Under the pieces are notes generated by a model. The model did not search any database. It was given only the letters and a program-made list of their open reading frames with translations, and was not told the origin of the DNA. This document shows positions 23,693 to 28,104 of a stretch of 64,000 bases of DNA, piece by piece. Source of the DNA: Oikopleura dioica (Eukaryota > Animalia > Chordata). The stretch lies in NCBI GenBank assembly GCA_907165135.1, contig OU015567.1:2294001-2358000 (forward strand), given 5' to 3'. A program made the position numbers and the translations under genes. How positions within the stretch are numbered: the first letter of the stretch is position 1; each line of letters begins with the position of its first letter.

Positions 23693-24880
23693 TTAAGTCC
23701 GAAATTCACAAGAAGTTGACTCAAGACTTGACCTAGTTTTCACAGAGGAGCCTTTTTGTTATCAGCTTGTTATCTCATCATTGGTTATGAATATTCAACC
23801 CCTATGGTATGAGCGAACGCTGATGTTTTTTCAGAATGAACTTCATCATCAGATAACTTCTATTTTTTTCTTGTCAATAATTCTGAATTCTACAGAAGAC
23901 GAGTGCAATGGATTTTTCCATTGTTTTTCGAAGCTGTAGTTTTCGTAGCGTTACTAATTCAGCTCAAACTCGAGGAAATGAAGTGGTTTGGCAAGTGTTC
24001 CGCGCTGACTTTCGCTGATCAGTAGGCATAAGTAGGGATGGGCTTGTCTTTGCTTATTCAGAATAAGACTGTAGAAGCTCAATTTGCGGCATTGGTGACA
24101 TAAGAGCGTATAAGAGGCATAGTCCACTCGTGGAGGCCGACGAGTTCGAAACGTCAGCAATAAAGAATAATCCATTAGTGCAAATAAGTCTCGATAAAGG
24201 AATTAGTTCGGCAGAAAATGACGCAAATTTTTGTTAATAAAAACAATATTAATGGACCTTACTATGCAATCTCCAAAAAACATGATCTTTGATGCCTAAG
24301 ATATCATTAACTTAATGATTCATTAAGTATAAAACCAGATAAATCAATCAGAAATGCATTACCATCTTCCTCCTTTTTTGAAAATTAATGATTGTAAGAA
24401 ATATAGAATATTAGAATAATGTCGATTCAAGGCGCCGAGTCGTCGAATCGAACATGAATAGACAATTTTAACGATATTTTTTAACCTGAAACTAGCTTGC
24501 TTTGTACCGAAAATTCTCAAAGATTAGGGCAATGTCAAATGCCATCGTATCCTTACAATCATATGTTCACACCCATAATCGGCTCAAACTCCTTCTGGTT
24601 GATCCTTTTTTATGGACATGATTTGCTTTTTACATGTGTTCGATAATAGGGATTGATCATAGCCGGCAAGTTGGGATTTGTTTATTGGAGAATCTTTGTT
24701 TTACAATATTATCCAGCAATCAACAAGGAGTTCACTCAGTCGTCAGGTAAATCTGTTAATTTGCCGCTTTCTCATTCGTTCAGGATCTTTTTGGGAAAAG
24801 ATCGGAGACAGAAAATCCATTTGTAGCGTTCTCCATGTTTCTTCGAGAAAAAATCAACATCAGCGTCTTTGAAACATCAT

Positions 24881-27800
24881 TTAACCCACTCTTGACGGAA
24901 GCTCGCTTACCTGGAGACAGTAAAAAGCTATGCCAGTCAAAAATAGCTTCATGCATCCAAAGAGCAATCCTGCAATCATCGAGCCAATCGAGAATATCGT
25001 CAAAACAGCAAAAAATCGTATTGTGTATAGTAATCACGCATAAACAGATGTGGTAAGAGGAATATTCCCGAGCACGCGCGATAACTTATACTATGGATGA
25101 CTCTTAGCAGCCTTAGAGTCAAGGTTATGGTTTGGGTAGTATGTAAGCAAGTGCTCATCACCTACACACTACCTAGGGGAAATATAAATGAGCTTATTCT
25201 AGGGATGGAGGGCGGGTGAGAATTTTGAGAGTTGCATAATTCTCGGCTTCGCGAGTTTGGATACTCTCAAAATTCTCTTAACTTTTCCCCTAAGAATATT
25301 ATAGCCCTTGGCTATAATTTTCGGAACTGGTTTGCGTGAGTACCGGACAGCCGCTTAAATGACTCGCTCTCTTACGCCCGTATCACCTCCCACTTCTTTT
25401 CTGGGTCATGGCGCTGTCGTTTCCCTGGCTGCTTATCCGAGTCTACTAGCGCTTGCACTGATTATCCGAATCCTATATTCGTATAGTAATCACGCATAAA
25501 CAGATGTGGTAAGAGGAATATTCCCTCCCCTACCATTTTTGTTATTCTCATCATTTGGAGAAATTTTCTAGCCTTTTTATAAAAAGGAATTTACCAGTTT
25601 AACTTTTAAGAAAAAGGTGAGAATGTTTTGTTTATCAAGATGCTAGATTTATTATTTTTTTTTTAATAAATCTGCATCTAAGGAATCGTTTCTAGTGCAG
25701 AGCATAGTCCTTTTTTCCTTAGTTGAAAATTCTTTGGCTTCGCCATCTTGCCAGCTCTGGCTTCCGGAAAACGGAAATCAAAATTTTTAGGCGATTTTCT
25801 AAAGTTTGCACTGCGTGCGCTTTTTGAACCTGCCTAGATGATGGGCGCTAGTTAGCAAAGAGTTCTCGTCTTCAATGTCACAGATCTTATAATTTGATCG
25901 AAGCATGATACTCGGTGAGAAATGCGTCAAGCCGAGTGCAGGGAGATGCAACACGCCCACCGCCAGGAGTTAACTCCTGCTAAGACAGCTGCAGGGCCAA
26001 ACTCGAGTGAACTGGTGGCAAATCATGGAGCTTTCGGCGTGTGATGACTGAGCCAAAATGGAACTAAATGCCATATGGAGAGGCTTTGTACCTCCGAATT
26101 TCGAGAAAAATATTTTCAATCGGTTGTAAAAACCTTGAACTCGGATTTTTAGTTAAAGTCTGCGCAAATTTAACGCGCGACTCTTTTTTTTTGTACTTCA
26201 CGACTTCTAGCGAGAGTCGCTTTGTATTGCGAGTCTTATTTTTCTCGTTCCTCGTTGAGAACTTCTTTCTACGAGTATCTTAACCGGCCGGAATCAGGCA
26301 AGTGGGTCAAGATTTATTTTACACAGTCTGAAAGAATGAACTTGGTGAAGCGGTTCTGAAGGTGTTTTAGAATGAGATTTTTAAATTCTCTTTTGCACCT
26401 TGTTCAGGAAGACCTGAAGTTTTTACTTTTTGCCTTCGAATATTTGAAACGAGGCCTTTTAATTATTGTCCCAAAGACTTTCTTTTTAGTCTGCAAAAGA
26501 CTTCGCTTTCCAGTCAAGAGACTGTATAGTTTAAAGTCAAGAAGACTTAGGTTTAGAGTCAAGAGACTGTTCAGTTTATAGTCTTGAAGAGACTAGGGGT
26601 AGAATAAGCGGTAAATCCAAATGATGGTCTACCTAAGAGTGTTTTGAGAGTTGCATAATTCTCGGCTTCGCGAGTTTGGATACTCTCAAAATTCTCTTAA
26701 CTTTTCCCCTAAGAATATTATAGCCCTTGGCTATAATTTTCGGAACTGGTTTGCGTGAGTACCGGACAGCCGCTTAAATGACTCGCTCTCTTACGCCCGT
26801 ATCACCTCCCACTTCTTTTCTGGGTCATGGCGCTGTCGTTTCCCTGGCTGCTTATCCGAGTCTACTAGCGCTTGCACTGATTATCCGAATCCTATATTCT
26901 TTTAGTAGAATGGCATATTGTGCGGTTTCGTGAACAAATGGCATCACGTAGTCTATTTAATAGAGTTCAAGAAAGAAACTTTGAAAAGTTCACCTTCAGG
27001 TAAATCGAGGCCAAGGAACTTTTCCAACGGCTTGACTCCTTCCTTCACATTAAAAACCAACAACCGTTCTTTTGGAATAACAGTCTGAACGTATCTGACC
27101 CAGTTGATGTAGAACTGTTCCCAGTCAGAAGACGGCCATGCCCAGAAATTGTCGAGATCGGAAGTCAGCTGCTGATTTTCAGGGGCGGTGGAATTTCCCT
27201 TTTCGATGCCTTTGCCAAGCCAAGATCTTGCCATTTTTCGCTGATAAGAGACGGCGAAGACAGAGGCAGGATGAGCGGTAAGGTAGAAGATATTCGTCTA
27301 GAAGCCCTAAAATGGGGTAGACAAGCCTTTACGCCGACAAAATGATCAAACACTTTGTTTTTGATCTTACCTCTCTATAATGCTGCATAACTGTATTTTC
27401 AAAAGACTCAACCCATTTTTTCGGACTGTCGCGGATTCCGAGAATCACGCTTGCATCTGGAAATGCATCGGCCAGCTCTTTCACCATGAAGCAAGTCGGG
27501 ATATCCGTGCTAGAAATATACCCTCGATCTTTTACGAATGAAATTATCGAGTCAACATCGTTGCGATCAAGGCAATCGACCCAGAAACCCTGGTCATTTG
27601 AGGTGTAGCATTGCGAGCCATGATAGCTAAAAGATTTTTAAAAAATTTGAAGAATATCTCTTACCTGGGAGCAGGGATGTACATTCGCAGAAATTTTTGC
27701 TTTGCGCTGCGCTGCGATTGCGGATTTTTTTGTGGGCGATTTTGCGCTGTTTTGCGCTGCGGAATCCGAAAATCGCGCAAATTGCAAAATTTTGCGCTGT

Positions 27801-28104
27801 TTTGCGGAAAATGGTAATTTCTTGATTTTGCGGAAATTTTGCGGATTTTGCGCTTTTTGTGGAATTGCGGATTGCGCAAAAACACGCAATTTGCGTAATT
27901 TTGCGAATTTTGCTGGATTTTCGCGCATTTTGCGGAAATTTGCGGATTTTGCGCTGCAGAATGAAAAATCCCGCATTTTGCGCTGTTTTGCGGATTTTGC
28001 GCTGCGAATGTACATCCCTGCCTGGGAGAAAGACCGTTGTCTTCGAAAAATTTGCGAGTCGATAGAGTTCCAGTTCTGCAAAGACCACCTCCGATTACTT
28101 TCAT
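24881..28104 (-). CDS. Sulfotransferase (Sulfotransfer_4 / P-loop type) with C-terminal TM tail; interrupted by two insertions
   Basis: KVIGGGLCRTGTLS, PSYH, DIPTCFMVKELADAFPDASVILGIRD, IPKERLLVFNVKEGVKPLEKFLG motifs; the last exon is split by 25025-26899, and removing it gives ...AILLK-TIRFFAVLTIFSIGSMIAGLLFG in frame. Confidence 0.85.
25025..26899 (-). mobile_element. Non-autonomous element with split direct repeats A---BA--B and no TSD (PAT/Ngaro-like tyrosine-recombinase retroelement architecture)
   Basis: A = 258 bp at 26642-26899 and 25223-25480; B = 45 bp at 25481-25525 and 25025-25069; B1 abuts A2; the empty site reconstructs the host ORF exactly; the interior has only decayed ORF fragments. 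Confidence 0.75.
27672..28020. mobile_element. hAT-type MITE (349 bp)
   Basis: 19-bp perfect TIR CAGGGATGTACATTCGCAG; 8-bp TSD CCTGGGAG at 27664-27671 and 28021-28028; interior made of short TTTGCG-type repeats. Confidence 0.9.

What the first reader, a model, noticed from the sequence alone, without database searches (positions are those of the whole stretch)
25025..26899. Miniature A---BA--B split-direct-repeat element inserted with zero target duplication
On the minus strand: A (258 bp), 1.1-kb decayed interior, B (45 bp) directly joined to A, 153-bp spacer, B. This is the layout described for PAT/Ngaro-type tyrosine-recombinase retrotransposons, which integrate without a TSD. Joining 26900 to 25024 restores the host frame (…CTA CTA AAA|ACA ATA CGA TTT…), which independently fixes both ends. 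The repeat copies look identical, so the insertion is recent, yet there is no RT or YR ORF. It is a candidate non-autonomous YR retroelement family.
Basis: partly seen in the sequence, partly recalled or inferred. Interest (0 to 1): 0.85.

Follow-up and report, generated by a model that had tools for sequence, protein, structure and literature searches.

The report
Miniature tyrosine-recombinase retrotransposon in Oikopleura
This is a 1.9-kb gene-less miniature of the giant (about 15 kb) tyrosine-recombinase retrotransposons of the tunicate Oikopleura dioica; it inserted recently, without duplicating its target, into the first exon of a small transcribed open reading frame, and it shows which short end sequences such elements keep when they lose all their genes.

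Summary
On the minus strand the layout is A1 (258 bp), interior (1116 bp), B1 (45 bp) joined directly to A2 (258 bp), spacer (153 bp), B2 (45 bp). A1=A2 and B1=B2 are both 100% identical.

A public run of a diverged O. dioica lineage carries contigs that join 25024 directly to 26900. This fixes both ends and shows there is no target duplication.

The same A..BA..B layout bounds at least 10 elements of 14.5-15 kb in this genome. They encode a reverse transcriptase and a tyrosine recombinase, have no detectable methyltransferase, and have no target duplication.

The miniature shares with them only the repeats, about 110 nt after A1 and about 65 nt before B1. These stretches include a 9-12-nt complementary pair that covaries across subfamilies.

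It is therefore a non-autonomous Ngaro-like (split-direct-repeat) YR retroelement, most likely mobilised in trans. As a "family" it is thin: one complete copy, one fragment sharing its interior, and four or five 74-97% identical A-spacer-B solo units that resemble SIRE of VIPER.

The scan had already noted the giant partner elements elsewhere in this genome. The miniature itself is new.

Interest is moderate: a new variant of a known kind.

The parts
26642..26899 (-). A1, the 5' terminal repeat (258 bp); starts GAATATAGGATTCGG
   Evidence: 258/258 identical to A2. It is 78-81% identical to A of three 15-kb elements and 95-97% identical to the solo units.
26616..26633 (-). Conserved leader block just 3' of A1: GGTAGACC followed by CATCATTTGGA (the 5' half of the complementary pair)
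   Evidence: GGTAGACC is invariant in the 11 elements in which the leader was recovered (the A1/leader end of a twelfth, E_C3_223, was not found in the fetched region). The 11-nt half pairs with 25549-25559.
25526..26641 (-). Interior, 1116 bp, with no RT/YR coding capacity
   Evidence: Only the first ~110 nt and last ~65 nt match the large elements. Element positions 612-927 recur at 90.5% next to a partial A at G000 C3:1052422-1052861.
25526..25559 (-). Conserved pre-B1 block: TCCAAATGATG (the 3' half of the pair), GAGAATAAC, and a purine-rich tract running into B1
   Evidence: Near-invariant across subfamilies that otherwise differ by 20-30%. Pairing with compensatory changes is shown.
25481..25525 (-). 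B1 (45 bp); starts with the palindrome GGAATATTCC and ends ...GATTACTATAC
   Evidence: 45/45 identical to B2. 40/45 identical to the group-1 large elements and 36-37/45 to group 2.
25223..25480 (-). A2, joined directly to B1. The B1|A2 junction is the internal copy of the joined element ends.
   Evidence: The junction TAC|GAAT is invariant in the six elements aligned across B1|A2, and the first three bases after B1 are GAA in the six others.
25070..25222 (-). Spacer (153 bp) between A2 and B2
   Evidence: Homologous at 76-82% to the spacers of the large elements.
25025..25069 (-). B2, the 3' terminal repeat
   Evidence: An X3 contig crosses from B2 into host exon 1 with no mismatch.
26900..26944 (-). 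Host exon 1, upstream part (ATG plus 15 codons), 8 nt after the stop codon of a Sulfotransfer_4 gene
   Evidence: translation. PF17784 at E 4e-9 for 26956-27234.
24911..25024 (-). Host exon 1, downstream part (38 codons), ending at a GT donor
   Evidence: The intron 24867-24910 is absent from an X3 contig.

Best explanation
The element is a non-autonomous miniature of a family of split-direct-repeat (Ngaro-like) tyrosine-recombinase retrotransposons of Oikopleura dioica, whose autonomous members are 14.5-15 kb long.

What is shown: it keeps every non-coding part that is conserved in the family. These are A1, a ~110-nt leader, a ~65-nt pre-B1 block with a purine-rich tract, the B1|A2 junction, the spacer and B2. 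It has lost all genes. Its interior has been replaced by about 900 bp of unrelated sequence.

What is inferred about mechanism: its RNA is copied by a reverse transcriptase supplied in trans by the large relatives. The internal B1|A2 junction then serves as the template or bridge that joins the B2 end to the A1 end of the cDNA, giving a circle. The family's tyrosine recombinase crosses that B2|A1 junction with the chromosome, which explains an insertion with no target duplication.

What is shown about this insertion: it is recent and polymorphic. It sits 45 nt into the first exon of a small transcribed ORF, downstream of a sulfotransferase gene. A spliced transcript runs from the 3' part of the element into that exon.
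For: 1. Layout and identity of the repeats.
2. The same layout, with the same termini (5' GAAT..., 3' ...ATAC), occurs in at least 10 large elements whose A1/A2 are 99.2-100% identical.
3. RT in the large elements: RVT_1 at E 5e-10. The RT ORF is 97% identical to an annotated O. dioica OKI2018_I69 protein, and distant relatives carry a Dam domain as DIRS-order elements do.
4. YR in the large elements: the ORF is homologous at E 4e-44 to an O. dioica protein with PF00589 above the cut-off. Pfam on the ORF itself gives E 0.0016, and Atlas features point to integrase.
5. No target duplication at 11 of 11 elements.
6. An exact empty site exists in run X6.
7. Retention of cis elements. A block of ~30 nt before B, B itself and the first 30 nt of A is nearly invariant across subfamilies. 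A 9-12-bp leader/pre-B1 complementarity is present in 10 of 11 elements (7 bp plus a bulged 4 bp in the eleventh), with double compensatory changes at 5 positions.
8. The interior is not unique to this locus. X6 is homozygous empty here yet holds contigs 95-98% identical to the interior. X5 and X6 share a 37-bp indel and several base differences from the window copy. A fragment on C3 shares 316 bp of the interior.
9. [quoted passage not shown]
Against: 1. Only one complete miniature is in this assembly.
2. No autonomous element shares more than 81% identity in A, so the helper is unidentified.
3. No contig was seen that shows the same A1-interior-B1A2 structure at a second locus. The presence of the interior elsewhere is inferred from depth in contigs, and only one reads call was available.
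4. Retrotransposition, the circle and trans-complementation are inferred by analogy, not observed.
5. Run X3 is labelled 'DNA?' by the tool. I treat it as cDNA only because two of its contigs lack 44-nt GT..AG introns.
Confidence: 0.75

Rival explanations
1. A full-length ~15-kb element inserted here and was later gutted in place by deletion and sequence replacement, so the miniature never moved as a miniature.
For: Only one complete miniature is in the assembly.
Against: A1/A2 and B1/B2 are still 100% identical, which leaves little time for a 13-kb loss plus a 900-bp gain. About 900 bp of the interior has no counterpart in any large element. The interior is present in X6, where this site is empty on both haplotype contigs, and part of it recurs next to a partial A on C3. 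No 95%-identical full-length parent exists in the assembly.
Confidence: 0.13
2. The miniature moves as DNA. The family's tyrosine recombinase excises it as a circle and re-inserts it, Crypton-like, with no RNA step.
For: YR enzymes can excise and integrate circles. TSD-less insertion and an exact empty site fit precise excision as well as ancestral absence. Solo A-spacer-B units could be resolution products of a circle with two B|A junctions.
Against: The conserved leader/pre-B1 pairing and the purine tract next to B1 look like reverse-transcription signals. Every autonomous relative keeps an RT. The terminal repeats are homogenised to 99-100% in all copies, as replication through an internal junction would give.
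Confidence: 0.1
3. One reading: a 411-bp insert (25070-25480) that made a 45-bp target duplication inside an unrelated element.
For: None beyond the geometry.
Against: B-A-spacer-B, with B conserved at 36-45/45, recurs at the 3' end of at least 11 other elements, and A recurs at the 5' end of ten of them. A target duplication would not be conserved between independent elements.
Confidence: 0.01

Closest known systems
Ngaro-like YR retrotransposons (order DIRS; Goodwin and Poulter 2004, as described in PMC9210276 and PMC4157794)
   Same: Split direct repeats with A1 at the 5' end and B1, A2, B2 at the 3' end. In the large relatives YR lies downstream of RT/RH. No methyltransferase domain. Insertion without target duplication.
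   Different: The miniature has no genes at all. Its autonomous relatives are 14.5-15 kb, whereas the DIRS-like elements quoted in PMC9210276 are 4.1-6.2 kb. RT/YR phylogenetic placement against reference Ngaro sequences was not done.
PAT-like elements (Pat1 of Panagrellus redivivus; PMC4157794)
   Same: The A1-B1-A2-B2 split direct repeats and the DIRS-order RT/YR pair.
   Different: PAT elements carry a methyltransferase domain. None was detected in this family, although the same Pfam model does find one in another O. dioica element at C4:2824893-2825171.
SIRE, the short non-autonomous relative of VIPER in Trypanosoma cruzi (PMC6681497)
   Same: A gene-less relative of an SDR-type YR retroelement. 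The solo A-spacer-B units found here (for example G000 C4:473372-473825) correspond exactly to SIRE, which equals the A2..B2 region of VIPER.
   Different: The miniature keeps the whole architecture (A1, leader, pre-B1 block, B1|A2 junction, spacer, B2), so unlike SIRE it retains the internal junction thought necessary for replication.
DIRS-1 of Dictyostelium and its truncated helper/donor construct (PMC7192593)
   Same: Shows experimentally that DIRS-order proteins act in trans and that the internal junction region is essential. This is the logic invoked here.
   Different: [quoted passage not shown] Nothing was tested experimentally here.
TRIM/LARD non-autonomous LTR retrotransposons
   Same: Terminal repeats and replication signals are kept while the coding interior is lost or replaced by unrelated sequence; mobilised in trans.
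   Different: Those have full LTRs at both ends and a 4-6-bp target duplication made by a DDE integrase. Neither applies here.

Membership tests
SDR-type YR retrotransposons (Ngaro/PAT/VIPER layout) | Split direct repeats: A1 at the 5' end; B1 directly joined to A2, then B2 at the 3' end; A1=A2 and B1=B2 | tested here: met
   258/258 and 45/45 identical, with B1 abutting A2.
SDR-type YR retrotransposons (Ngaro/PAT/VIPER layout) | Integration without target-site duplication | tested here: met
   The empty-site contigs in X6 join 25024 to 26900 with 0 shared letters. There is no TSD at 11 of 11 family elements.
SDR-type YR retrotransposons (Ngaro/PAT/VIPER layout) | Encodes RT/RNase H and a tyrosine recombinase | tested here: not met
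   The miniature has no such ORF, so it can only be a non-autonomous member. The large relatives with the same repeats do encode RT and YR.
SDR-type YR retrotransposons (Ngaro/PAT/VIPER layout) | Replication through RNA and a circular DNA joined at B2|A1 | not testable with these tools
   Only indirect evidence: homogenised repeats, a conserved junction, and cDNA-like contigs over the element in X3.
Ngaro-like (as opposed to PAT/DIRS1-like) | Absence of the methyltransferase (Dam-like) domain | tested here: met
   No PF05869 hit in ORFs of the large elements. A genome-wide six-frame search finds PF05869 only at C4:2824893-2825171, in a different element.
Ngaro-like (as opposed to PAT/DIRS1-like) | RT and YR cluster with reference Ngaro sequences in a phylogeny | not tested
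The closest non-Oikopleura RT hits (30-38% identity) carry no Dam domain, while more distant ones do.
SIRE-like short elements (A2..B2 only) | Consists only of the A-spacer-B unit | tested here: not met
   The miniature has A1, an interior and B1 as well. Four or five separate solo A-spacer-B units (95-97% identical; one at 74%) do fit this description.
TRIM/LARD (LTR type) | Identical LTRs at both ends plus a short target duplication | tested here: not met
   The 5' end carries A only and the 3' end carries B-A-spacer-B; there is no TSD.

The most novel reading that the evidence does not exclude
The miniature is a currently mobile, trans-mobilised element that defines the minimal cis-acting set of an SDR-type YR retrotransposon. 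That set is about 930 nt: A, a 110-nt leader, a 65-nt pre-B1 block, B|A, the spacer and B. The covarying leader/pre-B1 complementarity would be a previously undescribed cyclisation (or paired protein-binding) signal needed for replication. The SIRE-like A-spacer-B units would be recombinase resolution products of the two-junction circle.
Probability: 0.35. Interest if true: 0.7.

Novelty: new variant of a known kind. Interest (0 to 1): 0.55.

Why it matters
How split-direct-repeat YR retrotransposons replicate is still a model rather than an observation. The only experiments are on DIRS-1, which has a different repeat layout.

A natural gene-less copy that keeps the full repeat architecture shows which sequences selection retains. 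Here those include a covarying long-range complementary pair and a purine tract next to B1. That gives concrete, testable candidates for replication signals.

It also shows that O. dioica's giant YR elements have non-autonomous dependants. One such insertion is polymorphic between lineages, disrupts a transcribed ORF in an operon-like gene pair, and is part of a spliced chimeric transcript.

Tried and rejected
1. Two exact-pattern scans of metagenome contigs found nothing. One used a 30-mer from the miniature's interior and the other the pre-B1 block. This says little, because matches must be exact.
2. Profiles of the two YR blocks against PDB sequences gave no hit up to E 1 and E 5. The YR assignment therefore rests.
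3. Atlas search of the ~1000-aa first ORF of a large element gave no usable hit. Pfam also found nothing.
4. RNA run X22 laid no read on the stretch, which the tool itself marks as 'no test'.
5. A search for paralogues of host exon 1 found only the locus itself.
6. I considered an inverted repeat around the B|A junction (GATTACTATA / TATAGGATTC, 8/10) as a recombinase core site. I dropped it because the second subfamily does not keep it (my reading of the sequences).
7. I considered a tRNA-type primer-binding site in the leader and dropped it, because the TGG start is not conserved in group 2.
8. I looked for similarity between target flanks and the A start. The sample is too small and the similarity is not in register.
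9. The joined (spliced, or insertion-removed) host ORF was translated only in a local script and was not sent to any search tool. Exon 1b was searched by reference.

Full report
**What is there.** On the minus strand of the window the stretch 25025-26899 reads as follows:
- A1: 26899-26642, 258 bp
- interior: 26641-25526, 1116 bp
- B1: 25525-25481, 45 bp
- A2: 25480-25223, 258 bp, joined directly to B1
- spacer: 25222-25070, 153 bp
- B2: 25069-25025, 45 bp

The two A copies are 258/258 identical and the two B copies 45/45 identical. No ORF longer than 71 aa lies inside the element.

**Organism.** The genome has 64.3 Mb in 19 contigs. Proteins from the related elements are 61-97% identical to annotated proteins named Oikopleura dioica OKI2018_I69. 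The window is therefore from that tunicate.

**Ends and target.** One reads call was available.
- Run X6 comes from another study and carries another organism label. Its flanks are about 6% diverged from the window. It holds two contigs of 258 nt that join 25024 directly to 26900. They skip exactly 1875 bases, and no letter could belong to either side.
- The depths of those two contigs (55 and 45.6) add up to the local single-copy depth, so X6 appears homozygous for the empty site.
- This fixes both ends independently of any reading-frame argument and shows zero target duplication.
- The insertion is real in the assembled strain. X1 holds 95% of the sampled words, and an X3 contig crosses the B2/host junction without a mismatch.

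**Is the layout a family trait?** Yes.
- A genome search with the element, followed by fetching of flanks, shows the same A1 ... B1A2 - spacer - B2 layout around at least ten elements of 14.5-15 kb.
- Three of them (G000 C1:10099556-10114543, C2:974137-988985, C4:3747315-3762311) are 78-81% identical to the miniature in A and 40/45 in B.
- Seven belong to a second group that is 36-37/45 identical in B.
- Their own A1/A2 pairs are 99.2-100% identical.
- All start GAAT... and end ...ATAC, and none of the 11 elements has a target duplication.

It is excluded because a target duplication would not be conserved between independent elements.

**What the large elements encode.**
- One ORF matches RVT_1 (E 5e-10, above the cut-off), with weak RNase H matches. 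About ten RT copies of the family are in the genome.
- The ORF near the 3' end matches Phage_integrase only weakly by itself (E 0.0016). However, it is homologous at E 4e-44 to an O. dioica protein (P0046) that matches PF00589 over nearly the whole model at 37.7 bits.
- The recombinase is encoded in three conserved blocks in different frames. This agrees with earlier notes of this scan that the family keeps introns.
- No Dam-type methyltransferase was found in the family. The same model does find one in a different O. dioica element.
- By content and layout the family is Ngaro-like, using the definitions in PMC9210276 and PMC4157794.

**What the miniature keeps.** Apart from the repeats and spacer, only the first ~110 nt and last ~65 nt of its interior are homologous to the large elements. 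The central ~900 bp has no nucleotide or translated similarity to them, so it is replaced sequence rather than decayed genes. The kept parts are the most conserved non-coding parts of the family.
- About 30 nt before B, B itself and the first 30 nt of A are nearly invariant across subfamilies that otherwise differ by 20-30%.
- Just after A1 comes GGTAGACC, invariant in the 11 elements whose leader was recovered.
- The 11 nt that follow A1's block (CATCATTTGGA) are the exact complement of 11 nt before B1 (TCCAAATGATG).
- This complementarity of 9-12 nt holds in 10 of 11 elements. Double compensatory changes occur at five positions between subfamilies: A-T/G-C, T-A/A-T, T-A/C-G, G-C/A-T and A-T/T-A. 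One position shows an A·C intermediate.
- The complementarity could be an RNA or cDNA pairing that brings the two ends of the interior together, or a pair of inverted protein-binding half-sites. I cannot tell which.
- A purine-rich tract runs into the start of B1, in the position of a polypurine tract.

**Other members of the miniature's own subfamily (95-97% identical).** None has genes.
- Solo A-spacer-B units lie at C4:473372-473825 (intact), C4:6208901-6210093 and C3:2209937-2216902 (both interrupted by other insertions). A more diverged one lies at C3:976430-976875 (74%).
- A B-A-spacer-B unit at C3:2225787-2226285 begins exactly at GAATATTCC, after the position of the purine tract.
- A fragment at C3:1052422-1052861 has the first 128 nt of A followed by 316 nt of the miniature's interior at 90.5%.
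- The solo units correspond exactly to what PMC6681497 describes for SIRE, which is the A2..B2 region of VIPER.

**Evidence that the interior exists elsewhere.**
- X6, although empty at this site, has contigs 95-98% identical to the interior.
- X5 and X6 share a 37-bp indel and several base differences relative to the window copy.
- X3, from the same study as the best holder of the window sequence, shows two of those differences.

This points to at least one more miniature-like copy or allele outside the assembly. The single reads call could not show its flanks.

**Host context.**
- The element lies 55 nt downstream of the stop codon of a Sulfotransfer_4 gene (PF17784, E 4e-9).
- Eight nt after that stop there is an ATG (26944) that opens a 159-nt exon. 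The insertion cuts this exon after codon 15.
- The exon's GT donor, the 44-nt intron 24867-24910 and the next exon are confirmed by an X3 contig that lacks the intron. A second X3 contig lacks the 44-nt intron 27326-27369 of the sulfotransferase gene.
- I therefore treat X3 as cDNA, although the tool only guesses its kind.
- The same intron-less contig runs on from host exon 1 through B2 and the spacer into A2 (to 25239). So a minus-sense spliced transcript contains the 3' part of the element fused to the host exon.
- Contig depth is higher over this part (about 12) than over the upstream gene (0-4). This hints at a start inside the element, but depth over repeats is unreliable.
- The 81-aa ORF has no paralogue, so its coding status is open. 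The tight spacing of the two genes would fit an O. dioica operon; that reading rests on my own knowledge of the species.

**Mechanism proposed.**
- Shown: the architecture, the conserved cis blocks, TSD-less insertion, polymorphism, and RT plus YR in relatives.
- Inferred by analogy with the DIRS-1 experiments, in which proteins act in trans and the internal junction region is essential (PMC7192593), and with the published SDR model: the miniature's RNA is reverse-transcribed by enzymes of the large elements. The B1|A2 junction bridges the cDNA ends into a circle. The recombinase then crosses the B2|A1 junction with the chromosome.
- The helper is not identified, because no autonomous copy is more than 81% identical in A. 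The junction, pre-B1 and leader blocks are nevertheless nearly the same in the group-1 large elements.

**Novelty.**
- YR retrotransposons with split direct repeats are known. DIRS-order elements are known in O. dioica (PMC3266345, PMC5240408). A short relative (SIRE) is known for VIPER.
- The giant partner elements were already noted by this scan on other DNA of this genome.
- I found no description of a gene-less element that keeps the complete split-direct-repeat architecture, nor of the covarying leader/pre-B1 pair. The library searched is limited, and Volff et al. 2004 could not be read.

**Limits.**
- No assemblies of other O. dioica lineages were available.
- There is no phylogeny with labelled references.

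Noticed in passing
G000 C1:10099556-10114543, C2:974137-988985, C4:3747315-3762311, C1:13148111-13162714, C4:14190609-14205300 (approx.), C4:3347004-3361510, C1:7996224-8010909, C5:~358437-373158: The autonomous relatives are 14.5-15 kb, about three times the size quoted for DIRS-like elements. Their 5' half holds a ~1000-aa ORF and others with no Pfam or Atlas match. Earlier notes of this scan describe the same giants.
   Followed up: partly
L033:2049-3322 (-), L044:4900-6227 (+) and the same region of the other large copies: The recombinase gene is split into three conserved blocks in different frames, separated by 100-250 nt of unconserved sequence. This looks like retained introns in a retroelement.
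   Followed up: partly
G000 C4:2823804-2825294: A different DIRS-order element: its RT is 41% identical to the giant family's, and it holds the only Dam-type methyltransferase match in the genome.
   Followed up: no
G000 C3:2225787-2226285: A B-A-spacer-B unit in unrelated flanks. It starts exactly at GAATATTCC, the first bases after the purine tract. This may mark a plus-strand start or a secondary recombination site.
   Followed up: partly
window 25908-26007 (and 26343-26420): Two ~80-100-nt pieces of the miniature's interior resemble (76-83%) sequences found at many other loci. The first of these occurs as inverted pairs 0.8-2.8 kb apart (for example C5:14702644/14705412 and C2:11775833/11776626), like the terminal repeats of a DNA transposon or MITE.
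   Followed up: no
window 26953-27487 (-): A Sulfotransfer_4 gene with 44-nt introns. Its stop codon lies only 8 nt before the ATG of the interrupted ORF, an operon-like spacing.
   Followed up: partly
window 25935-25971: Runs X5 and X6 both lack these 37 nt in their copies of the interior and share several base differences from the window, so they carry a distinct variant of the miniature's interior.
   Followed up: no
window 27690-28000: A dense array of TTTTGCG-type short repeats and inverted repeats just upstream of the sulfotransferase gene. Another first-stage note calls it a hAT MITE.
   Followed up: no
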